Virus record (IMG/VR): IMGVR_UViG_3300049460_000312
Span: 186,001 to 250,000 of that record
Length of the DNA: 64,000 nt
Direction: 5' to 3' (one strand)
Both the position numbers and the translations under genes were made by a program. Shown here one piece after another: positions 17,289 through 45,582 of this stretch. The number at the start of each line of letters is the position of its first letter. The stretch's first letter is position 1. The notes below the pieces were generated by a model. It was not told the DNA's origin. It worked only from the letters and a program-made list of their open reading frames with translations, and ran no database searches.

Positions 17289-19454
17289 TCAAGGAGCAGG
17301 CGTCACGTCCGTCGTGTCGAGCGCACCCGACACGAGCACCGGCACGCGCGTCTCGACCGTGGTCGGGATACCCGTGACCGTCAGCTTCATCAGAACCGGG
17401 AGGTTCGTGATGTGGCGGAATGCCGGCTGAACCGTGAGTTCCTTGCTGTTCGCACCGTTACGGTGGATCGGCAGGACGACCGTGACTTCCGGCTTCCATG
17501 CCATGTTGCCGAACTGCAGCGGATGCGGAACGCCGTCAGCTGCGCCCTTGACACCGAACGTCACGAAAATCGTGCCGTGCATTGCTTCGTTCTGCGTGTC
17601 CACGATGAGGACTTCTTCGAAGCCACCGCCGATGGTGCGCAGATCGCCTGCAACTTGCAGGTAACGAGCCGTGGTCTGGTCCGTACCGATGATGACGACC
17701 GGCTTGGCCGATTCGCCGCCAGCGAGCATGTCGGCTGCTGCCTTGTAGCCGGACATCTGGTACGCACGGAACACCATGTCGCGGATCACGTTGATCAGCG
17801 TTGCCTGGATGTTCGCAGCGAGTTCAGCGCTGTTACGCGTTTGAACCGTGCTGTCGACCTTGATTTCCTGCTCTTCGTAGTACGCCGTGATCAGGTGGCG
17901 GGCGATGCCCAGCACCATCAGGTTGTCGCCCAGCGGACGACGGCCTTCTTGCACGAGCGCCTTCAGCGTGTCGGCAGCCTTGAACAGTTCCGTCACGGCC
18001 ATGCCCGATGCCATTGCGCGCGTCAGCGTAACCAGCGAAGCCAGGTCGCTTGCGTCCGTCGTGTCGTTCAGGCCTTGCGGGCGCTTCACGGTGAACGGCG
18101 ACAGCAGCGGCACGGCGTATGCCTGCACGTCTTGACGCGTTTCGAGCATCTGACCGATCGAACGACGGTTCAGGTTGGTACGGCGTGCGTCGAGGTCGTA
18201 ACCGATGACTTGTGCGGTCGCGAACAGCGCAACGATAGCAGCCATCGAACCCGACGTCGGCAGAAGCACGTCGCCCGAAGCGTCGATGATCTTGTCCACG
18301 CGAACCGGCGATGCGTTGATTTCCGTGTCACCCTTGTCGCGAACGACCGAACCCGTCACCGTGGTCTTGATGTAGACGACCAGGTTGCCGTCGACCACCG
18401 GCTTGAGCGTGTCGAGTGCGGCGCCTGCGACGTTCAGCGTCGTCGGGTTGATCGACAGCGCGTTGGTTTCCAGACGCACGTCCATGCGTTGCTGGTCGCC
18501 CTGGATCGGGTACACGAACTGCGCGCCCGGCAGATGCGTCGTCGGGAACTTCAGCACGTCGTTGCCGACCTTCACGTACACGGCCTTCATCAGGATGTCC
18601 GTGTCGATCGAATCGGTTTCGTCCATGTGCCCTTGATCCAGCTGCAGATCGGTCTGCGACAGGTCGATCAGGTCGAACACCTTGTTCACTGCCAGCGGCG
18701 CGGTCGTGATCGACTCGCCGTTCACGTCTTGCTGCGACGTTGCGACCAGCGCCGGATCGACGAAGTTCGCCTTCGTTGCATCCGTCACGCGCGGCACGAT
18801 GTGCGTCGACGTCGAGTTGATCAGACCCGGGTTGCGGATCACGTTGACGATGTTGTGGCGGTTCCAGTTGTCCAGCTCGCCGGTGGCCTTACGGCGCACG
18901 CCGTTGATCAGGTTCACCAGGTTGATGTGGATGTGGTAACCTTGCTGGTCGGGAGCGACGACCACGGTCGGGTAGAACGCTTCGCCGAACGCGTCTTGAC
19001 GCGCGGCTTGCAGGTTGTACGCCACCGTGTACACTGCAGCTGCACGGTTTTCCTTTTCGTCGTACGATTCCATCGCCGGTCCGATACGGCCGATGCCGTT
19101 CGACGCTGCGAGGCCGCCTTGCACGTGCGACATGTCGCTGTTGCGCAGGAACGCGCCGATGTCGCCCGACACGGCGCCAGCGTAGACAGCAGCTTCGCGC
19201 TGAGCCGAGGTGAAATCACCTTCGAGGCCAGCGACAACGCTGTTCAGGCCCGACAGGGTCGAAGCCAGGTCCGATGCCGAGACGGCGTCGTCGAAACCTT
19301 CGAGGCCGAGTGCTGCGCCCGAGCCCTTGACGGTGCTCAGACCATCACGGCCCGACAGACGCATTTGGTTTTCGACTGCGTCGATAGCGGACTGCAACGG
19401 CGATTGCGTTTGATGGCCGTTGAAGCCAGCCATCAGTTTCTTCAGTTGAGACAT
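17289..19454 (-). CDS. Major capsid protein (phiKZ gp120-like)
   Basis: 721 aa with extreme codon bias; LEG/MESYD propeptide-type motifs, QDAFGEAFYPT and LQFGNMAWKPE; adjacent to DnaB. Confidence 0.9.
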   Translation of the reverse strand: MSQLKKLMAGFNGHQTQSPLQSAIDAVENQMRLSGRDGLSTVKGSGAALGLEGFDDAVSASDLASTLSGLNSVVAGLEGDFTSAQREAAVYAGAVSGDIGAFLRNSDMSHVQGGLAASNGIGRIGPAMESYDEKENRAAAVYTVAYNLQAARQDAFGEAFYPTVVVAPDQQGYHIHINLVNLINGVRRKATGELDNWNRHNIVNVIRNPGLINSTSTHIVPRVTDATKANFVDPALVATSQQDVNGESITTAPLAVNKVFDLIDLSQTDLQLDQGHMDETDSIDTDILMKAVYVKVGNDVLKFPTTHLPGAQFVYPIQGDQQRMDVRLETNALSINPTTLNVAGAALDTLKPVVDGNLVVYIKTTVTGSVVRDKGDTEINASPVRVDKIIDASGDVLLPTSGSMAAIVALFATAQVIGYDLDARRTNLNRRSIGQMLETRQDVQAYAVPLLSPFTVKRPQGLNDTTDASDLASLVTLTRAMASGMAVTELFKAADTLKALVQEGRRPLGDNLMVLGIARHLITAYYEEQEIKVDSTVQTRNSAELAANIQATLINVIRDMVFRAYQMSGYKAAADMLAGGESAKPVVIIGTDQTTARYLQVAGDLRTIGGGFEEVLIVDTQNEAMHGTIFVTFGVKGAADGVPHPLQFGNMAWKPEVTVVLPIHRNGANSKELTVQPAFRHITNLPVLMKLTVTGIPTTVETRVPVLVSGALDTTDVTPAP

Positions 19455-24070: not shown

Positions 24071-24117
24071 GTTCGAGTAAGTTCTCTCTGAATGAGTAAA
24101 GGGATTACTGCAGGATG

Positions 24118-24125
24118 GTGATATG
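24118..24125 (-). promoter_or_regulatory. Early promoter core (CATATCAC)
   Basis: Variant of TATATTAC, just downstream of a terminator and about 48 nt upstream of the ATG. Confidence 0.55.
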
Positions 24126-24183
24126 TGGTTAAAAAAGCGACGACATAGAGAGGAGGGTGTTTCCCTCCCTCGTTTATACCGTT

Positions 24184-33154: not shown

Positions 33155-33589
33155 TTAGCGATCTGCACGAATCACGAACGAAGCCTTGCCAAGCTTGGTG
33201 CCGCGATCACAGAACTGCAATTCGAAGAAGTCGGTATCTTTCACATCCCCATCGAAGAAGAGCCAGGCATCGGGCTCCTCTTTATCGTTGGCTACATCGA
33301 TGGCGCCGCTGAGCGTGGTGAGAAACCGCGCATCCGCTTTACTGATCTTGGCGACCGCTTCGGGTGAAGCGCCCGTCATTTGTAATTTGTTGGTACGGAT
33401 ACTACACCAGAAGGAAATCATCTGGACCACACTTTTGTGCTCAGTGGTAAGCTTCACGCACTGCAGGTCTCGTGTCTTCGCCGGTTCCAGGCGAACACTG
33501 TGACCACTGGCGCTGATAAAGCTCACCAAAGCGTGGCCTGCCAAGAACTTGGCGGTGTCACTTGAAAACAGGTTGGACAAGAAACCCAT
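33155..33589 (-). CDS. Hypothetical protein
   Basis: RBS GGAG before ATG at 33589. Confidence 0.6.
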   Translation of the reverse strand: MGFLSNLFSSDTAKFLAGHALVSFISASGHSVRLEPAKTRDLQCVKLTTEHKSVVQMISFWCSIRTNKLQMTGASPEAVAKISKADARFLTTLSGAIDVANDKEEPDAWLFFDGDVKDTDFFELQFCDRGTKLGKASFVIRADR

Positions 33590-33727
33590 GGTTGACTCCA
33601 AAAAGAAAAACCGGTGAAAAGAACGGGGAAGAGCTTGCGCCCTTCCCCGTATAAAGGCGTAACCCAGAAGGGAAACGCAATCGAGAAAGAACCAGAAGCA
33701 GCCACATGGATGCTTATGTTCAGGTTT

Positions 33728-33735
33728 GTTATATG
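33728..33735 (-). promoter_or_regulatory. Early promoter core (CATATAAC)
   Basis: Same architecture as the other copies, downstream of a terminator and heading a small-gene run. Confidence 0.5.
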
Positions 33736-33810
33736 TGGTTGAAAATTATTAGACTTTAATCCAGCGGCATAACAGCCAGAGCAGGCGTATGCCCGCTCTG
33801 GCGAAAGCCT

Positions 33811-34593
33811 TTACTGAACGTGCGCCTGGGCGACCTGCCGGGCGAAATAGACCGTGTGGGTCGACTCCGTCGGATTGCGATCCTTGATACTCGCGATCAC
33901 GCGTACCAGAACCTGTGGTGCTACCGCCATATTCTTGCCTGCGTCCGGAGTGGCATCCATCACAAACGACAGCGACACGCGAATCGACCCGCTGGTCTGG
34001 TTCTGCGCGCAATGCTCGGTGATATACTTCTCATTGTTTTTCAGGCAATGGTAGAGGTAGACACCCAGTTGCTCGACGCTATCGTTCATGCACATCCAGC
34101 CGTCCTGCGCCATGGCCGCAACCATCTCTTCTGTCAACACGGTCATAACAGAATAGTCCATCTCCAGTTGCTTAAGCTCATGCCAGCGGTTCTTCTCGTA
34201 GCCCGCCACATTGCTGTAGTTGGTCACGCGCTGTTCACCCTCCGCTGTGTAATGGGTGGTGGTCACCAGGTTCAGGCGCACCGGCCCCTTGCGGACGCCG
34301 GAGAGTTTGCGGATATGGCTCAGAATCGAAATGCAGGCACTACGCGGATCTTGCGGTTCGCTGATCGCCTGGACATACGAGGACAGATCGATGAAGGGAA
34401 TCGCTCGTGCGCTCGTCTGCTGCATCTCCTCAAGACTGTCAACCACTGATTCCTTGCGATCTTCCGGTACGGTTTCCTTCTTAGTGGCAGGCACTTCACG
34501 AGCACGATCGGGCAAGACATAGCCCGCGATAAACAGCAGCAGGTAGCCGAAGAACAGCCGGATACCGCGCACACACCTGGCGATGGTTTTCAT
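33811..34593 (-). CDS. Membrane-anchored hypothetical protein
   Basis: N-terminal TM (LFFGYLLLFIAGYVLP); ATGA-coupled to the upstream NTase. Confidence 0.65.
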   Translation of the reverse strand: MKTIARCVRGIRLFFGYLLLFIAGYVLPDRAREVPATKKETVPEDRKESVVDSLEEMQQTSARAIPFIDLSSYVQAISEPQDPRSACISILSHIRKLSGVRKGPVRLNLVTTTHYTAEGEQRVTNYSNVAGYEKNRWHELKQLEMDYSVMTVLTEEMVAAMAQDGWMCMNDSVEQLGVYLYHCLKNNEKYITEHCAQNQTSGSIRVSLSFVMDATPDAGKNMAVAPQVLVRVIASIKDRNPTESTHTVYFARQVAQAHVQ

Positions 34594-35537
34594 TTGCCTC
34601 CTTCGAGCAACATTTCAGCAAAGCGAGTGTTCAGCCTGTTGATCTGCTTGAGATAGTTTTCCATACTCCGGTCCGCCAGATGCGGCGGGACGATGATCAC
34701 CGGACGGCTCAGGACCAACGGGTGCAGCTTATCGATCACCCGAATACAGGTCGGGTGCCAATAGCTGTGACCGTTCTTGAACAAGCCATCGCGCAGATGC
34801 GGCAACATATTGCGTTGCAGGAACGAGACGTTGACATCCTGACCCACGTCCTGCAGATAGCCGTCGATGAGTTCGGCTAGGGTGAGGGTTTTGTTCAGCA
34901 CCAGCTCGCTCACAAAGCGCTGGCTCGTCACTGCCCAGCCAAGGAACAACCGGTAGATCGCATCCGAGATTTCCGAATGCTTGATCTCACCGCCTGACTT
35001 CATCAAGCCCCGGGCTTTGCTGGCGCGCCCGGCACAGGAATGCCGATAGCGCTCTGCGTCGAACGTAGAGGCTGCGAACGTATCGATCTGCTTGGTAAGG
35101 ACGTCATTGCCCATGAAGTCGATCACGAGGTTGTCGTGCCCGATGCGGAAGTCCAGATTACCCTTGCCGATTTCCCGCACAAAGAAGTCCAGGCTGACGA
35201 AGTTCAACTGCACCTCTTTTTCATCCACGGTGAAGTCTGCGTGCGTGCGTTGAAGCACTGACAGCGTGACTTGGGGCGGCACCGATTCTTCTTCAGCTAC
35301 CTGACGCGTATCGGCGGGGATCATCCGGGCATACTGGGAGATACCGCCCAGATACACCACGTACAGATCGATGTCCGATTCCGGACCCGCATAGCCTTTG
35401 GCCTGTGAGCCGAAAACTCCGGCATAAACCGGACGGATGTGAAAACGATCGCACTGCGCCTGGATCTCACGCATCAACATCCCGTAAAACGCTTCGCCGA
35501 ACTGACGTTCGAACGTCTTGTTATCGAAAAGCCCCAT
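34590..35537 (-). CDS. Pol-beta superfamily nucleotidyltransferase (RlaP/Nuc-transf-like), copy 2
   Basis: GVFGSQAKGYAGPESDIDLYVVY = GS-x2-xG-x4-SDxD signature; start corrected to 35537. Confidence 0.8.
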   Translation of the reverse strand: MGLFDNKTFERQFGEAFYGMLMREIQAQCDRFHIRPVYAGVFGSQAKGYAGPESDIDLYVVYLGGISQYARMIPADTRQVAEEESVPPQVTLSVLQRTHADFTVDEKEVQLNFVSLDFFVREIGKGNLDFRIGHDNLVIDFMGNDVLTKQIDTFAASTFDAERYRHSCAGRASKARGLMKSGGEIKHSEISDAIYRLFLGWAVTSQRFVSELVLNKTLTLAELIDGYLQDVGQDVNVSFLQRNMLPHLRDGLFKNGHSYWHPTCIRVIDKLHPLVLSRPVIIVPPHLADRSMENYLKQINRLNTRFAEMLLEGGK

Positions 35538-35590
35538 ACCACCCTCAATGTGTTCAGATGTTAAACGGGCCGCGCGAGGCGGCCCGGGTC

Positions 35591-36529
35591 TCATGCAGCC
35601 AACAACTCCGTCGGCGGCGTTTCGGCTTTGCTCTTGCCGTTACGCTCGTCTTCGTGATCGAGCAACTCCTGGTAGAGGTCGATCATTTCGCGAGTTTCTT
35701 CGGGCAGGTTCGGATACTGCTTCGGATGCTCGCGCAGGTAGTCCGTCGCCAGACGCAGTACGCGGCCGGTGAACTGCCTGAGCAGGCTGACGGCGTTCTC
35801 GTTGATGCCCTGCGGCATGTCGAACGGGCTACGTTCGGTACGCGCACGAATCACGCCCGTGACTTCCCGAAGAAAGCCTTCGGACATCGAGGTGGCCCAA
35901 TTGGCACGATTCATTTCGATCAGTTCCTGAATCGTACGGCAATGCTGCTTGTCGCCATCCAGGTAGGCGAGCATGCGGTGCGCCGACCAGAGCGTACCGA
36001 GGTAAGTGCGTTCCTGCTTGTACTCACGGCCATGATCGTCAATGGCTTGTAGCGTGCGCATACCGTTGGTGATATGTTCACCGCAGCGATGCACCAGGTT
36101 CGGCAACAGGAAATAATCCTGCGCGATGTCCTCGAACAGGAACCGTACCTGAGCGTTGTCCGCGGCGAAGCGTTCGTACGCCATCAGCGAGAAGGTGCTC
36201 GCATTCATGATGCCGCGCAAGAGACTACGCATATCCAGCAGCGATACCATGATCTGCCAGCCGAGCTCCCGCGACATCTGCGTGGAGAGCTTGGCGAGCT
36301 TGTCGCGCCGGTCATCCAGCGTGCCTTCGAAAATCGGCGCGTTGGACATGTTCAGGTAGTCCGAGACGGGTCGGTTCAGCAGGAAGCAGATGTCCGTGTC
36401 GGAGTTCGGGTCATTGAAGCCGCGCAGGATCGATCCGTGGATCGTCGCTGCCGTTACTTCCAGTCCCAGGTGACGAGAGACTAGGGCGGTGGCTTCAGCA
36501 AGTCGTTGCTTTTTGAGTTGTTCGTTCAT
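35591..36529 (-). CDS. Pol-beta superfamily nucleotidyltransferase (RlaP/Nuc-transf-like), copy 1
   Basis: IHGSILRGFNDPNSDTDICFLL signature and LDMR third-acid region; ends in ELLAA. Confidence 0.8.
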   Translation of the reverse strand: MNEQLKKQRLAEATALVSRHLGLEVTAATIHGSILRGFNDPNSDTDICFLLNRPVSDYLNMSNAPIFEGTLDDRRDKLAKLSTQMSRELGWQIMVSLLDMRSLLRGIMNASTFSLMAYERFAADNAQVRFLFEDIAQDYFLLPNLVHRCGEHITNGMRTLQAIDDHGREYKQERTYLGTLWSAHRMLAYLDGDKQHCRTIQELIEMNRANWATSMSEGFLREVTGVIRARTERSPFDMPQGINENAVSLLRQFTGRVLRLATDYLREHPKQYPNLPEETREMIDLYQELLDHEDERNGKSKAETPPTELLAA

Positions 36530-36582
36530 TTTGGTATCCTCGATGTGGTTTTTGGCAATAGACCTAGATCCATTCTACGTTT

Positions 36583-36590
36583 GTGATATG
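36583..36590 (-). promoter_or_regulatory. Early promoter core (CATATCAC)
   Basis: 54 nt upstream of the NTase pair. Confidence 0.55.
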
Positions 36591-36681
36591 TGTCTGAAAC
36601 TAAGTCCAGATCACCATCCAAGCCAGTTGCTCACAACAAGGACACCGTGCTGTATTTTCTAATTACTTACAACTATCCTAC

Positions 36682-37105: not shown

Positions 37106-37513
37106 TTAAGTTTCCCAGGGACGAGGGCACGCTACCCCAAGCGCGCGTTTTCTTTGCAGTTCGTCCCGCCGTTTTGTTTCTTTGATACAAATCTGTCGCA
37201 CCCGCTGATATGAGATATCCAACGCCTGCGCAATCCTGCGATACGTGTAGCCCCGGATGTTGTGCTGAATGACGATGTGACCAAATAACTGCGCCACGCA
37301 ATACACGCTGGTCTGTAAGCCGGTTTCCTTTCTCGCCACAAGCATGTTCTCCCGCGTACGGACTACCCACTCTTTCTGAGCGGACGTCAGTAATGGGGAA
37401 AGCTCTTGCTCCAGCTTATTCAGCTTGACCAGAATCTCGTCAAAACGCTGCAGATGAAAAGACTTACGCTCGTTGAGCTGCTCCATGGTTAGGGAATGGG
37501 GCTTAGCGATCAT
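37106..37513 (-). CDS. HTH protein resembling sigma-70 region 4
   Basis: GYTYRRIAQALDISYQRVRQICIK matches the G.T..EIA..LgiS.eRVrQi sigma r4 pattern. Confidence 0.65.
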   Translation of the reverse strand: MIAKPHSLTMEQLNERKSFHLQRFDEILVKLNKLEQELSPLLTSAQKEWVVRTRENMLVARKETGLQTSVYCVAQLFGHIVIQHNIRGYTYRRIAQALDISYQRVRQICIKETKRRDELQRKRALGVACPRPWET

Positions 37514-37686
37514 CGTTCTTCCTCATGTGGGTGCATGCGATAAAATAACCCTCCGAGTAAGAATTAGCAGCGCGCCCGCATTCTGTAGCCGCCACAACCC
37601 AATCCCGGTGGCTAGTTACATTCCATTTAACCTGGGTCGCTGTTCAGCTCGTTGGTTGAGGAAGTGCCGGTAACGCCCGCAGTACC

Positions 37687-37756
37687 TGCTCTGGTAGTAG
37701 ATTGGAATAACGCCGGTTACGACCCGGAAAAGTGGGTTCGATTCCCATCCAGGCAG
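37687..37756 (+). tRNA. tRNA-Arg(ACG)-like element, degenerate, no encoded CCA
   Basis: T-arm GTGGG-TTCGATT-CCCAT; anticodon arm CCGG-TTACGAC-CCGG; acceptor TGC(T)CTGG/CCAGGCA with a bulge; weak D-stem. Confidence 0.5.
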
Positions 37757-37765
37757 TGTCACAGC

Positions 37766-39746: not shown

Positions 39747-41093
39747 TCAGACACTGAGCGTGTCTGCTTTGCTACGAAACACTTCGTCAGCAGCAGGCGT
39801 CGATGACGTGACAGCCTGCACAAAACCTTCTGGGTCGTCCTCGTGCTCACTGAAGAAGGCGCTGATGTCGCAGGCCCGCAGCGAGCGCTCAATGGGCGTA
39901 TACGCCGGCCAGGAGCGTCCGTAGGACTTCTCGTAATACTCCATGATCGAGCGGGGTTCCATCCGACCCACTTCAATCAGACACGTCACGCGACCCGGGC
40001 GATACAGAGCAGGATCAATCTGCTCCAGATGGTTGGTGGTGAAAATCACCACGCAATCCGTGACCTCTGTGGGTGACTGCAGACTCGCCAGCATGCGACC
40101 CAAAACCGGATCATCGTCCATGATGAATTCACCAGGCTTTGGTTCAGTTTTCTGACGCTTACGCAGCCCCTGCATATAGGTGTCGAAATCATCCATCAAA
40201 AGGACAGGCACTTCCCCTTCAGTGATGTTCTCGCGCGCGGCGTAGACCATCTCGGAGAGCAGTACCGGATTGTGTCCGGAGCTGCTGATGGCGTTGACCA
40301 CAAAAAGCGAAGTCCGTAAACGCCAGGCGATATACTCCGCCAGTGCGGACTTACCGGTGCCGGGCTCACCATACAGCATGATCACGAGCTTGTGCGGGAA
40401 GTCCATCCTATTCTTCTTCTCGCGATGCCGAAGAAAAGTATCGATAGCTTCATCGATCTGCTGCTTGACCTTGTGGTCCAGTGCTAGAATGGGTAGCCCG
40501 GTAAAATTACGCTGACGCATGGCTTTAGGCTCAGCGCTCGACCACGGCGGCGTGATCAACTGATAGATACCAGGCACGGTATATTCACGCGCACTTTCAC
40601 CCAGCACCTCCAGAATCCGCTTGCGATGCATGCGCAGCGAGGTCAATGACAGGGTGATGATGCGGCGTTGCTTCTCGCCCTTTTGCTGCTGTTCCTGCCG
40701 CCGCGACACCCAGATCCAGGCGCCAGCATAATAGAAGAAGAAACCGCCATCGGCCAGCGTCTCAGCGAGCCGTTTCTTACGGGTGGTGAGGCGCGCGGTC
40801 GAACGTTGTCCGGAGATCCGTTTCTGGAGCGCATGCTCAAACTTCTCTGCCACCATCTGGATCATGGTGCGACCATCATCGTAGTCGTACTCGATGTAAT
40901 ACGTGAAGACCACGAAGCGACGGGCAGCGAACCAGAACTTCTTGGGTAAGCCCCGCGCGAAATACGCAATCGATGCAAAGATGGACGCTGTCGCTGCCCC
41001 GGCGATAAGCGGATTACCATTCAGCGCACTGGAGACCCAGCCCGTGAACATACCTACTAACTGCTGGACCTGCATAAGGGAGCTTGAAATCAT
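39747..41093 (-). CDS. BCS1-like membrane-anchored AAA+ ATPase
   Basis: N-terminal TM (NPLIAGAATASIFASIAYF), Walker A GEPGTGKS, Walker B LLMDDFD, SRH TTNHLEQIDPALYRPGR. Confidence 0.85.
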   Translation of the reverse strand: MISSSLMQVQQLVGMFTGWVSSALNGNPLIAGAATASIFASIAYFARGLPKKFWFAARRFVVFTYYIEYDYDDGRTMIQMVAEKFEHALQKRISGQRSTARLTTRKKRLAETLADGGFFFYYAGAWIWVSRRQEQQQKGEKQRRIITLSLTSLRMHRKRILEVLGESAREYTVPGIYQLITPPWSSAEPKAMRQRNFTGLPILALDHKVKQQIDEAIDTFLRHREKKNRMDFPHKLVIMLYGEPGTGKSALAEYIAWRLRTSLFVVNAISSSGHNPVLLSEMVYAARENITEGEVPVLLMDDFDTYMQGLRKRQKTEPKPGEFIMDDDPVLGRMLASLQSPTEVTDCVVIFTTNHLEQIDPALYRPGRVTCLIEVGRMEPRSIMEYYEKSYGRSWPAYTPIERSLRACDISAFFSEHEDDPEGFVQAVTSSTPAADEVFRSKADTLSV

Positions 41094-45413: not shown

Positions 45414-45489
45414 TGGCTCCCCGGGTTGGACTTGAACCAACGACCAACGGATTAACAGTCCGCTACTCTACCGACTGAGCTACCAGGGA
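45414..45489 (-). tRNA. tRNA-Asn(GTT) with encoded CCA
   Basis: TCCCTGG/CCGGGGA acceptor, D-arm GCTC-AGTCGGTA-GAGT, anticodon loop CT-GTT-AA, T-loop TTCAAGT. Confidence 0.95.
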
Positions 45490-45505
45490 TCTACTACAGA
45501 AACAA

Positions 45506-45582
45506 TGGCGCGGCGTAGGGGACTTGAACCCCTGACCCCTGGCGTGACAGGCCAGTACTCTAACCAACTGAGCTAACACCGC
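45506..45582 (-). tRNA. tRNA-Asp(GTC) with encoded CCA
   Basis: GCGGTGT/ACGCCGC acceptor, anticodon loop CT-GTC-AC, T-loop TTCAAGT. Confidence 0.95.

What the first reader, a model, noticed from the sequence alone, without database searches (positions are those of the whole stretch)
33811..36590. Early operon with tandem RlaP-like Pol-beta nucleotidyltransferases and a membrane-anchored partner
Seen: promoter, NTase 1 (312 aa), NTase 2 (315 aa), then an ATGA-coupled membrane protein. Both NTases keep GS..SDxD but are very divergent from each other. Known: RlaP-type Pol-beta enzymes are predicted RNA-repair nucleotidyltransferases usually linked to RNA ligases; the same fold includes CD-NTases and CCA-adding enzymes. 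No ligase is visible here. Inference: a two-enzyme module, possibly a heterodimer or split-specificity pair, that repairs tRNA ends cut by host anticodon or CCA nucleases, or makes a decoy nucleotide signal.
Basis: partly seen in the sequence, partly recalled or inferred. Interest (0 to 1): 0.65.

Follow-up and report, generated by a model that had tools for sequence, protein, structure and literature searches.

The report
Phage RlaP-like nucleotidyltransferase pair with partner
A giant Ralstonia phage carries an early-promoter-driven three-gene module, with two very different RlaP-like RNA-end nucleotidyltransferases and an unknown partner protein that always travels with them; the phage has no RNA ligase, so this is a new variant of a known RNA-repair enzyme family whose job is still untested.

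Summary
It lies on the minus strand of a complete 283-kb phiKZ-related Ralstonia jumbo phage. An early-type promoter motif sits 54 nt before NTase1 (312 aa). NTase2 (315 aa) follows, then an ATGA-coupled 260-aa protein with a hydrophobic N-terminus, then a strong hairpin.

Both enzymes keep the GS…SDxD motif and a third carboxylate. Both fold as a Pol-beta NTase domain plus a HEPN-like helical domain.

"RlaP-like" holds at the level of structure and profile:
- NTase1's nearest Atlas folds are RlaP clusters (TM 0.71).
- NTase2 matches an RlaP profile at 99% probability.
- Neither reaches Pfam's RlaP threshold.
- CD-NTase, CCA-adding and aminoglycoside-NTase membership are not supported.

Three results are new.
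- The 260-aa protein family accompanies these NTases in 14 of 14 loci, whether NTase1 is alone, NTase2 is alone, both are present, or three are present.
- NTase2 is ancestral but has been lost in some lineages.
- Sister phages carry RNA ligases or RtcB elsewhere, but this genome has none and the ligase slot is empty.

The most likely function is nucleotide addition to RNA 3′ ends early in infection, with a family-specific partner. This is inferred, not shown. The heterodimer test gave no verdict.

The parts
36575..36605 (-). Early-type (virion-RNAP-like) promoter element, TTAGTTTCAGACACATATCACAAACGTAG. The core CACATATCACAAAC is at 36579-36592, 54 nt upstream of the NTase1 ATG.
   Evidence: Exact 14-mer matches flank the operon. 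The core ACATAT[TC]AC occurs 15 times in the genome, all on the minus strand, 10 of them intergenic. It resembles the phiKZ TATATTAC and 201phi2-1 early consensus. It is conserved upstream of NTase1 orthologues in L001, L002, L004, L006 and L013.
35591..36529 (-). NTase1, 312 aa (P0001). A divergent RlaP-like Pol-beta nucleotidyltransferase: NTase domain, HEPN-like helical domain and a C-terminal helix. Catalytic residues G32-S33, D44, D46, D99.
   Evidence: Pfam NTP_transf_2 28.6 bits (over cutoff); RlaP 20.5 bits against a cutoff of 23. phrog_34134, 8e-139. 26-member family, 52-80% identical, with invariant GS/DxD/D99 and many invariant Arg and His. AF2 model pLDDT 88. Atlas nearest folds are RlaP clusters, TM 0.71/0.77. 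PDB matches: HEPN Z 11, DrrA Z 10.2, ANT(3'')(9) Z 9.2.
34590..35537 (-). NTase2, 315 aa (P0002:20-334). An alternative 334-aa start at 35594 overlaps the NTase1 stop. It is a second, fast-evolving RlaP-like NTase with an inserted beta-hairpin. Catalytic residues G43-S44, D55, D57, D117.
   Evidence: Pfam NTP_transf_2 24.3 bits; RlaP 19.6 bits against a cutoff of 23. phrog_32942, 7e-68. Only 14 representatives at E<1e-10 among 1.84 billion proteins. hhalign against an RlaP-anchored profile: 99%, E 2e-18, 134 columns. AF2 pLDDT 90.7. PDB matches: ANT(4') E 3e-5, HalB, AadA, DrrA. BFVD matches: phage nucleotidyltransferases and the RP12 NTase1 orthologue. A third carboxylate is present at position 115 or 117 in 15 of 17 family members.
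33811..34593 (-). Partner protein, 260 aa (P0003). It has an N-terminal hydrophobic segment (residues about 10-28), a variable charged or Pro-rich linker, and a conserved domain of about 190 aa of unknown fold. Its ATG overlaps the NTase2 stop (ATGA).
   Evidence: phrog_32802, 7e-54. No Pfam, NCBIfam, PADLOC, PDB-sequence or Atlas match. Homologues lie directly downstream of the NTase(s) in 14 of 14 loci. Hydropathy. Conserved motifs PFTDLxSY, PVRL, RW and EMIEAMAQDGWxCMNDS.
33774..33803 (-). Strong hairpin immediately after the operon, followed by TTATGCCG (33765-33772). It is a copy of a genome-wide 'hairpin + TTTATGCCG' intergenic element and is the likely operon end.
   Evidence: strand folding gives dG -30.1 kcal/mol, z -4.5. 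The element has 82 motif matches, 66 of them intergenic, usually right after a GC hairpin.
33724..33737 (-). A second early-type promoter motif (CACATATAACAAAC). It serves the next gene (33601..33155) and marks the downstream boundary of the module.

Best explanation
This is an early-transcribed three-gene module of a phiKZ-related Ralstonia jumbo phage.

Shown:
- A promoter motif of the early (virion RNA polymerase) type precedes the module, and a terminator-like hairpin follows it.
- It holds two catalytically intact but very divergent Pol-beta nucleotidyltransferases. Their whole-protein fold and profile place them beside the RlaP family.
- It holds a 260-aa protein with a hydrophobic N-terminus. 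That protein's family accompanies such NTases in every related locus found.

Inferred:
- Like characterised RlaP enzymes, each NTase adds one or a few NMPs to the 3'-OH of RNA.
- The most probable substrates are tRNAs or tRNA fragments trimmed by host or competitor ribonucleases.
- The conserved NTase1 and the fast-evolving NTase2 would differ in substrate or nucleotide specificity.
- The partner protein would act as a specificity, regulatory or localisation subunit, possibly at the membrane.
- Because this phage has lost the RNA ligase that its relatives keep, the module must either work on ends that need no ligation (3' termini) or rely on a host ligase.
For: - Genes, coupling and motifs.
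- Early-type promoter. Hairpin.
- RlaP kinship: Atlas fold search gives TM 0.71/0.77 to four RlaP clusters over 254-273 residues. hhalign of NTase2 against RlaP gives 99%, E 2e-18; NTase1 against RlaP gives 95%. BFVD matches are phage nucleotidyltransferases.
- Architecture: NTase domain + helical domain + C-terminal helix, as in the PfRlaP crystal structure (PMC12776372; models).
- RlaP activity: 1-2 NMP are added to RNA 3'-OH, with a preference for a cleaved-tRNA mimic (PMC12776372).
- RNA repair runs in the clade. RP12 has an 'RNA ligase' and RtcB, and FLC1-1B has an RNA ligase. In the distant jumbo contig L020, an NTase2-type gene plus the partner gene lie 2.6 kb downstream of an RNA ligase.
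- NTase1 has many invariant Arg and His residues in the helical domain.
- The partner is present in 14 of 14 loci.
- The phage encodes its own tRNA-Asn and tRNA-Asp about 9 kb away.
Against: - No activity, expression or structure data exist for any member. No RNA runs hold this phage.
- Neither NTase reaches Pfam's RlaP gathering score.
- The genome has no RNA ligase, RtcB, 2H ligase, ATP-dependent ligase domain or PNK3P phosphatase domain (PNK-type end-healing). The syntenic ligase slot is empty. The canonical RlaP-plus-ligase pathway therefore cannot run on phage genes alone.
- In relatives the ligase lies about 80 kb from the module, so no operon link exists there.
- The same fold is used by enzymes that nucleotidylate proteins (DrrA, GlnE, MntA) or small molecules (ANT, AadA, LinB), with PDB Z-scores of 8-10.
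- No known RlaP system has a membrane-associated partner.
- If the partner's conserved domain is periplasmic (positive-inside rule), it cannot touch the NTases.
- The complex prediction gave no verdict.
Confidence: 0.4

Rival explanations
1. The enzymes are protein or small-molecule nucleotidylyltransferases (AMPylases). They would transfer AMP or another NMP to a hydroxyl of a protein or a small molecule, as DrrA, GlnE, MntA or the ANT/AadA/LinB enzymes do. The target could be the co-encoded 260-aa partner, a host factor, a host metabolite or an antibiotic-like compound. The two paralogues could be a writer and a remover, as in the two NTase domains of GlnE.
For: The best matches among solved structures covering both domains are DrrA (Z 10.2 and 9.8), ANT(3'')(9) (Z 9.2 and 10.0), ANT(4') (Foldseek E 3e-5), and GlnE N and C domains (Z 7.4-8.6). 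The C-terminal domain is HEPN-like, as in MNT-HEPN pairs where the NTase AMPylates its partner (7ae2, 8xdj). An invariably co-encoded partner would fit a dedicated protein substrate. The module does not need a phage ligase.
Against: Full-length similarity to predicted RlaP structures is clearly higher (TM 0.66-0.71) than to MNT+HEPN fusions (0.52) or to ANT/DrrA (TMq 0.40-0.45). NCBIfam scores for ANT and MntA are far below their cutoffs (12-24 bits against 60-505). The conserved residues of NTase1's helical domain are mostly basic, whereas aminoglycoside sites are acidic by general knowledge. The PfRlaP crystal structure is not in the PDB copy searched, so the PDB ranking is biased against RlaP.
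Confidence: 0.2
2. The module tails RNA for host takeover and not for repair. The NTases would add untemplated nucleotides to host tRNA 3' ends or host mRNAs early in infection. That would block aminoacylation or mark the transcripts for decay, as MenT-type toxins or bacterial poly(A) addition do. The chemistry is the same as in the best explanation, but the purpose is the opposite.
For: The module is placed among small early genes of unknown function and has an early-type promoter. It needs no ligase, which fits this genome. The RlaP preprint itself notes that RlaP action on ordinarily cleaved tRNA would reduce the pool of active tRNA. NTase2 and the partner evolve fast (24-40% identity where NTase1 keeps 55-67%), as expected of proteins that face host targets.
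Against: The phage needs host translation. There is no similarity to MenT or AbiEii families. There are no data on toxicity.
Confidence: 0.15
3. The module is a nucleotide-signal or oligonucleotide synthase paired with a membrane effector or sensor. The models are Hailong (HalB with HalA) or CBASS, or a phage-made decoy of such signals. It would serve superinfection exclusion or counter-defence.
For: HalB appears among the structural matches (Z 8.6 and 7.7; Foldseek E 1.4e-4). The module pairs NTases with a protein that has a hydrophobic N-terminus.
Against: There is no SMODS/CD-NTase or CBASS hit in Pfam or PADLOC. CdnE and OAS matches reach only TM 0.21-0.26. The partner has at most one borderline membrane segment and no channel-like features. 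In several homologues the segment is not hydrophobic enough to span a membrane. HalB ranks below the RlaP, ANT and DrrA matches.
Confidence: 0.07

Closest known systems
[quoted passage not shown]
   Same: Both share the GS-x9-SDxD-x4-6-Y signature and a third Asp. Both share the architecture of an NTase domain, a helical domain and a terminal helix. The full-length predicted fold matches (TM 0.71), as does the profile (99%). RlaP is frequent in jumbo phages (PMC7824862).
   Different: Both proteins score below the Pfam threshold, and each forms its own small family. They occur as a divergent tandem pair. They are always followed by a 260-aa partner protein, which I did not find described for RlaP in the two papers read. 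This genome has no RNA ligase, and in sister phages the ligase is about 80 kb away. NTase2 has an inserted beta-hairpin.
ANT/KNTase-type aminoglycoside and lincosamide nucleotidyltransferases (ANT(4'), ANT(3'')(9)/AadA, LinB)
   Same: The two-domain plan is the same: an MNT-type NTase plus a HEPN-like helical substrate domain. These are the best Foldseek PDB matches for NTase2 (E 3e-5) and reach Z 8-10.
   Different: TM is only 0.35-0.45. NCBIfam scores are 12-16 bits against cutoffs of 193-505. The phage proteins are longer (312-315 aa against about 250) and have an extra C-terminal helix. No resistance context is present.
Protein AMPylases with the GlnE/DrrA fold, and MntA-HepT type VII toxin-antitoxin pairs
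   Same: The NTase + HEPN-like arrangement is shared (DrrA Z about 10; HEPN toxins Z 9-11). These systems also pair an NTase with a dedicated protein partner.
   Different: MntA scores 22-24 bits against a cutoff of 60. Neither family conserves an Rx4-6H HEPN nuclease motif. The partner here is not a HEPN protein by sequence.
Split CC-adding and A-adding tRNA nucleotidyltransferases (functional analogy only, from general knowledge)
   Same: Two related Pol-beta NTases with different specificities act in turn on one RNA 3' end.
   Different: Those are class II CCA-enzyme (PolyA_pol) family members. The phage proteins show no such hit, and matches to CCA-adding enzymes reach only TM <=0.27.

Membership tests
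RlaP (PF10127) | Score over the Pfam gathering threshold (23 bits) | tested here: not met
   20.5 bits (NTase1) and 19.6 bits (NTase2). Only the first 60 or so residues align.
RlaP (PF10127) | Catalytic set: hG[GS], DxD and a third conserved Asp | tested here: met
   NTase1 has G32-S33, D44, D46 and D99, all invariant in 26 sequences. NTase2 has G43-S44, D55 and D57 invariant, and an acidic residue at position 115 or 117 in 15 of 17.
RlaP (PF10127) | Whole-protein fold: NTase domain + C-terminal helical domain + last helix (PfRlaP structure, PMC12776372) | tested here: met
   The NTase1 model's four nearest Atlas family sets are RlaP clusters, TM 0.66-0.71 over 254-273 residues. The NTase2 profile matches RlaP at 99% over 134 columns, and its model matches phage nucleotidyltransferases at TM up to 0.58/0.69. 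Packing of the last helix on the N-terminal helices was not checked because no coordinates were at hand.
RlaP (PF10127) | Genomic association with an RNA ligase (RtcB or a 5'-P ligase) | tested here: not met
   The 283-kb genome has no PF09414, PF09511, PF01139, PF01068 or PF13563 hit, and the ligase slot is empty. Relatives have ligases, but about 80 kb away. Only L020 has one within 3 kb.
RlaP (PF10127) | Adds 1-2 NMP to the RNA 3'-OH | not testable with these tools
   This is a biochemical property (PMC12776372).
CD-NTase / SMODS (CBASS cyclases) | Sequence match to SMODS/CD-NTase models, and a cGAS-like fold | tested here: not met
   No such hit in Pfam or PADLOC at E<=1. CdnE and OAS1 matches reach TM 0.21-0.26 with probability 0.33-0.51.
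CCA-adding enzymes (class I or class II) | PolyA_pol head domain or the archaeal CCA fold with a tRNA-binding body and tail | tested here: not met
   No Pfam hit. A. fulgidus and class II CCA enzyme matches reach TM 0.24-0.27.
Aminoglycoside nucleotidyltransferases (ANT) | NCBIfam equivalog score over the cutoff | tested here: not met
   11.9-15.9 bits against cutoffs of 193-505. The similarity is at fold level only.
MNT-HEPN type VII toxin-antitoxin | An MntA-type antitoxin model match, and a HEPN partner or domain with a conserved Rx4-6H motif | tested here: not met
   MntA scores 22.3 and 24.2 bits against a cutoff of 60. No column has Rx4-6H in more than 3 family members.
Hailong HalB oligodeoxyadenylate synthase | Close structural or sequence match to HalB with a HalA-like channel partner | tested here: inconclusive
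   HalB matches at Z 7.7-8.6 and TM 0.3-0.47, below the RlaP, ANT and DrrA matches. The partner has no channel features. PADLOC 2.0.0 dates from 2023 and may lack a model for Hailong, whose structures were released in 2025.

The most novel reading that the evidence does not exclude
The constant unit is not the NTase pair. It is 'one or more RlaP-like NTases plus the 260-aa partner': an undescribed two-component RNA-end (or protein) nucleotidylation system of jumbo phages that works without any RNA ligase. The partner, through its hydrophobic N-terminus, would place or gate the enzyme at a membrane early in infection. The paralogues (conserved NTase1, fast-evolving NTase2, and an inactive third copy in L022) would diversify substrate choice in an arms race with host ribonucleases.
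Probability: 0.15. Interest if true: 0.7.

Novelty: new variant of a known kind. Interest (0 to 1): 0.42.

Why it matters
RlaP enzymes were first characterised biochemically only in a December 2025 preprint. Their role is argued from their linkage to RNA ligases. This module breaks that linkage in three ways:
- The NTases persist in a phage that has lost its ligase.
- They come as deeply divergent paralogues.
- They always travel with an unknown partner protein.

If the partner proves to be a true subunit, it would define a new accessory family for Pol-beta NTases. It would also give a handle on what RlaP-like enzymes do in phage infection: tRNA 3'-end repair against host ribonucleases, or RNA tailing for takeover.

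The work also gives a usable early-promoter consensus for this clade of Ralstonia jumbo phages, whose isolated relatives (RP12, FLC1-1B) infect bacterial-wilt pathogens.

Tried and rejected
- Complex prediction with NTase2, partner residues 60-260 and NTase1 as the scored chain returned 'no answer' (score 0.00). It is no evidence for or against binding.
- Searches for the partner found nothing: the word search found only itself, the Atlas feature search gave no usable hit and holds no model, and a profile search against PDB sequences and Pfam found nothing.
- Sequence searches of both NTases against PDB chains found nothing meaningful.
- Scans of viral contigs and metagenome contigs with the NTase1 alignment gave only one locus each. 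Context came from the look-up of encoding contigs instead.
- The sigma-70 promoter scan found nothing relevant, as expected for a phage with its own RNA polymerases.
- No RNA-seq run holds this phage. All holders are rhizosphere or soil DNA metagenomes, so read laying was not used and 'early' rests on the promoter motif alone.
- The 334-aa form of NTase2 was considered and set aside in favour of 315 aa. Its 19 extra residues are not shared by the 62%-identical homologue P0031, whose alignment begins at the shared MGLF start.
- The hhalign pairing of NTase1 D99 with NTase2 D129 was set aside in favour of D117/S115. This rests on the alignment with true RlaP sequences and on the strand-then-helix position in the models.
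- The idea that the HEPN-like domains are nucleases was rejected because no Rx4-6H motif is conserved.
- The host genome was not searched for RtcB.


Full report
**Where the window lies.** The window is bases 186001-250000 of a complete 283,373-bp phage genome with direct terminal repeats. Its nearest isolated relatives are the Ralstonia jumbo phages FLC1-1B and FLC4-3B (about 80% DNA identity over part of the region) and RP12 and RP31. RP12 and RP31 are phiKZ-related phages that encode virion and non-virion multisubunit RNA polymerases (PMC5468394). The DNA of this phage occurs in rhizosphere and soil metagenomes. No RNA run holds it.

**The observation.** All features are on the minus strand.
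- NTase1 is 36529..35591 (312 aa, P0001).
- NTase2 is 35537..34590 (315 aa). A 334-aa alternative starts at an ATG that overlaps the NTase1 stop.
- The third gene is 34593..33811 (260 aa, P0003). Its ATG overlaps the NTase2 TGA, with a GGAGG 5 nt upstream.
- The 315-aa start fits the homologues and has its own Shine-Dalgarno sequence.
- Both NTases carry GS-x9-SDxD. NTase1 D99 is invariant.
- In NTase2 the acidic residue sits at position 117 or, in other family members, at position 115. Fifteen of 17 members have one or the other.
- The two proteins are barely alignable: BLASTP E 0.002 over 37 residues, and profile-profile 73% probability.
- PHROG matches of 8e-139, 7e-68 and 7e-54 and conserved synteny show that these are real genes.

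**Transcription signals.**
- The sequence CACATATCACAAAC lies 54 nt upstream of NTase1. A near-copy lies just past the operon, in front of the next gene.
- Genome-wide, the core ACATAT[TC]AC occurs 15 times, where I estimate about 3 from base composition. All 15 are on the minus strand, and 10 fall in the roughly 12% of the genome that is intergenic.
- The copies share an extended consensus, aAAGATTC-N6-7-CACATATTACcAa..TGAac.
- This resembles the early-promoter consensus of phiKZ (TATATTAC) and 201phi2-1 (PMC7058600). Such AT-rich motifs mark virion-RNAP early promoters in this phage group (PMC7598289).
- The motif is conserved at the same distance upstream of NTase1 in FLC1-1B and in four metagenomic relatives.
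- The operon ends in a 12-bp GC hairpin (dG -30.1, z -4.5) followed by TTATGCCG. This is a copy of an element found 82 times in the genome, 66 of them intergenic.
- 'Early operon' is therefore well supported by sequence, but no transcript data exist.

**What the enzymes are.**
- Pfam recognises only the first 60 or so residues. NTP_transf_2 is above its threshold, and RlaP is just below (20.5 and 19.6 bits against 23).
- AlphaFold models are confident: pLDDT 88 and 91.
- Both have an N-terminal MNT-type NTase domain, a HEPN-like four-helix domain and a long last helix.
- Against solved structures the helical domain matches HEPN proteins (Z 9-11). The two-domain unit matches DrrA, ANT(3'')(9), ANT(4'), AadA, GlnE and HalB at Z 7.4-10.2.
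- Against predicted structures, the four nearest family sets for NTase1 are all RlaP (PF10127) clusters, at TM 0.66-0.71 over 254-273 residues. MNT+HEPN fusions reach only 0.52.
- The NTase2 family profile matches a profile anchored on two full-length RlaP proteins, aligned with three weaker hits from the NTase2 search, at 99% probability, E 2e-18, over 134 columns. NTase1 matches that profile at 95% over the motif region.
- NTase2's best viral structure matches are phage 'nucleotidyltransferases' and the RP12 orthologue of NTase1.
- The PfRlaP crystal structure is described as an NTase domain, a helical domain and a terminal helix packing back on the N-terminal helices (PMC12776372). That is the same plan.
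- Neither family conserves a HEPN Rx4-6H nuclease motif.
- CD-NTase, CCA-adding, ANT and MntA memberships all fail their tests.
- I conclude that both are divergent members of the RlaP clade, and that each founds a small family of its own. NTase1 has 26 close homologues at 52-80% identity. NTase2 has only 14 representatives at E<1e-10 among 1.84 billion proteins.
- NTase2 is nearer to canonical RlaP than to NTase1, so the pair is not a recent tandem duplication.

**The module in relatives.** I examined 14 distinct loci.
- The 260-aa protein family is present directly downstream of the NTase gene or genes in all 14. HMM E-values go down to 2.7e-20 in the most distant locus.
- NTase1 is present in 13 loci and an NTase2-type gene in 11.
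- Three loci (L007, L015, L014) have NTase1 plus the partner only.
- One distant 283.5-kb jumbo contig (L020) has an NTase2-type enzyme plus the partner only.
- L022 has NTase1, an extra paralogue that has lost the GS and DxD motifs, NTase2 and the partner.
- On an NTase1 tree, the lineages without NTase2 are nested among lineages that have it. NTase2 is therefore ancestral and was lost once or twice.
- Across matched loci NTase1 keeps 55-67% identity, whereas NTase2 keeps 33-40% and the partner 24-36%.
- The constant unit is thus 'RlaP-like NTase(s) plus partner', which argues against an obligate NTase1/NTase2 heterodimer.
- The one complex-prediction job gave no verdict, and I draw nothing from it.

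**The partner.**
- It has a hydrophobic N-terminal segment, a variable charged or proline-rich linker, and a conserved domain of about 190 aa with motifs PFTDLxSY, PVRL, RW and EMIEAMAQDGWxCMNDS.
- No sequence method links it to any known family.
- In this phage the N-terminal segment scores 1.71 on a 19-residue Kyte-Doolittle window, with four positive charges before it. That would place the N-terminus inside the cell and the domain outside.
- In L004, L006 and L014 the segment contains Arg, Glu or Asp and scores about 0.9.
- 'Membrane-anchored' is plausible here, but it is not a secure property of the family. The topology decides whether the domain can meet the NTases.

**RNA ligases.**
That holds for the whole genome: there is no match at E<=1 to RNA_ligase, T4 Rnl1, RtcB, the ATP-dependent ligase domain, 2',5'-ligase or PNK3P.
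- Sister phages do carry ligases. FLC1-1B gp223 is an RNA ligase (PF09414, 2e-16). RP12 has an annotated RNA ligase (ORF209) and an RtcB (9e-129). Both phages carry them beside NAD-salvage genes, about 80 kb from the NTase module.
- In this genome the homologues of the ligase's flanking genes, gp222 and gp226, abut at 18043/18046, and nothing of the ligase is left.
- In L020 an RNA ligase lies 2.6 kb upstream of the NTase-partner pair.
- RNA repair is therefore a theme of the clade, but the module is kept where the ligase is gone.

**Mechanism.** Characterised RlaP enzymes add one or two NMPs to the RNA 3'-OH and prefer the 5' half of a cleaved-tRNA mimic (PMC12776372). In jumbo phages, RlaP was predicted to restore nucleotides lost to nucleases such as RloC before ligation (PMC7824862). 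By homology, the most likely chemistry here is NMP addition to RNA 3' ends early in infection. The two paralogues would differ in specificity, and the partner would be a family-specific accessory subunit. Without a phage ligase, the targets would be true 3' termini, or the phage would borrow a host ligase. I put this at about 0.4. The rivals are:
- protein or small-molecule nucleotidylation on the DrrA/GlnE/ANT model (0.2);
- the same RNA chemistry used to disable host RNAs (0.15);
- a nucleotide-signal system with a membrane partner (0.07).

None can be excluded without biochemistry.

**Verdict.** This is a new variant of a known kind: RlaP-like NTases in a ligase-independent, paralogue-rich module with a previously undescribed constant partner. 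Interest is moderate, because the function rests wholly on inference.

Noticed in passing
window 45414-45582 (-): Tandem phage tRNA genes, tRNA-Asp(GTC) and tRNA-Asn(GTT). Both are strong Rfam matches (about 69 bits) and both have an encoded CCA end. By general knowledge these are queuosine-family tRNAs, the class cut by colicin E5-type anticodon nucleases. RP12 is reported to have only tRNA-Asn.
   Followed up: partly
window 37686-37757 (+): A weak tRNA-Arg(ACG)-like sequence (Rfam 31.4 bits against a cutoff of 29). It is on the strand opposite to all neighbouring genes, between a terminator and the next gene. It may be a decayed or spurious tRNA.
   Followed up: partly
genome 17639-19068 (outside the window); compare FLC1-1B 202620-206197 and RP12 196759-203231: The RNA-ligase cassette present in FLC1-1B (gp223-225) and RP12 (ORF209, plus RtcB ORF213) is cleanly absent here. 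Homologues of the flanking genes abut, next to conserved NaPRT and PRPP-synthetase genes.
   Followed up: yes
whole genome, e.g. window 33765-33803 (-): An intergenic element made of a GC hairpin followed directly by (C/T)TTTATGCCG: 82 motif matches, 66 of them intergenic. It contains TATG, the core of phiKZ late promoters, so it may combine a terminator with a late promoter.
   Followed up: partly
whole genome; window copies at 24114-24127 and 36579-36592: All 15 copies of the early-promoter-like core ACATAT[TC]AC lie on the minus strand.
   Followed up: partly
window 39747-41093 (-): A 448-aa AAA ATPase with a BCS1_N-like, hydrophobic N-terminal region. It is conserved a few genes upstream of the NTase module in most related loci.
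   Followed up: no
window 37106-37513 (-): A small 135-aa protein with a weak sigma-70 region 4 / HTH match (21.5 bits, below the cutoff), just upstream of the module. It is a possible early transcription regulator.
   Followed up: no
L022:2582-3487 (+): In one metagenomic relative, a third NTase2-like paralogue sits between NTase1 and NTase2. It has lost both the GS and the DxD motifs and is probably a pseudoenzyme.
   Followed up: partly
L004:2878-3765 and L006:3471-4364: Related phages carry a gene of about 295 aa with a faint QueC (7-cyano-7-deazaguanine synthase) hit, two genes upstream of NTase1. No such hit was seen for the genes at the corresponding place in this window.
   Followed up: no
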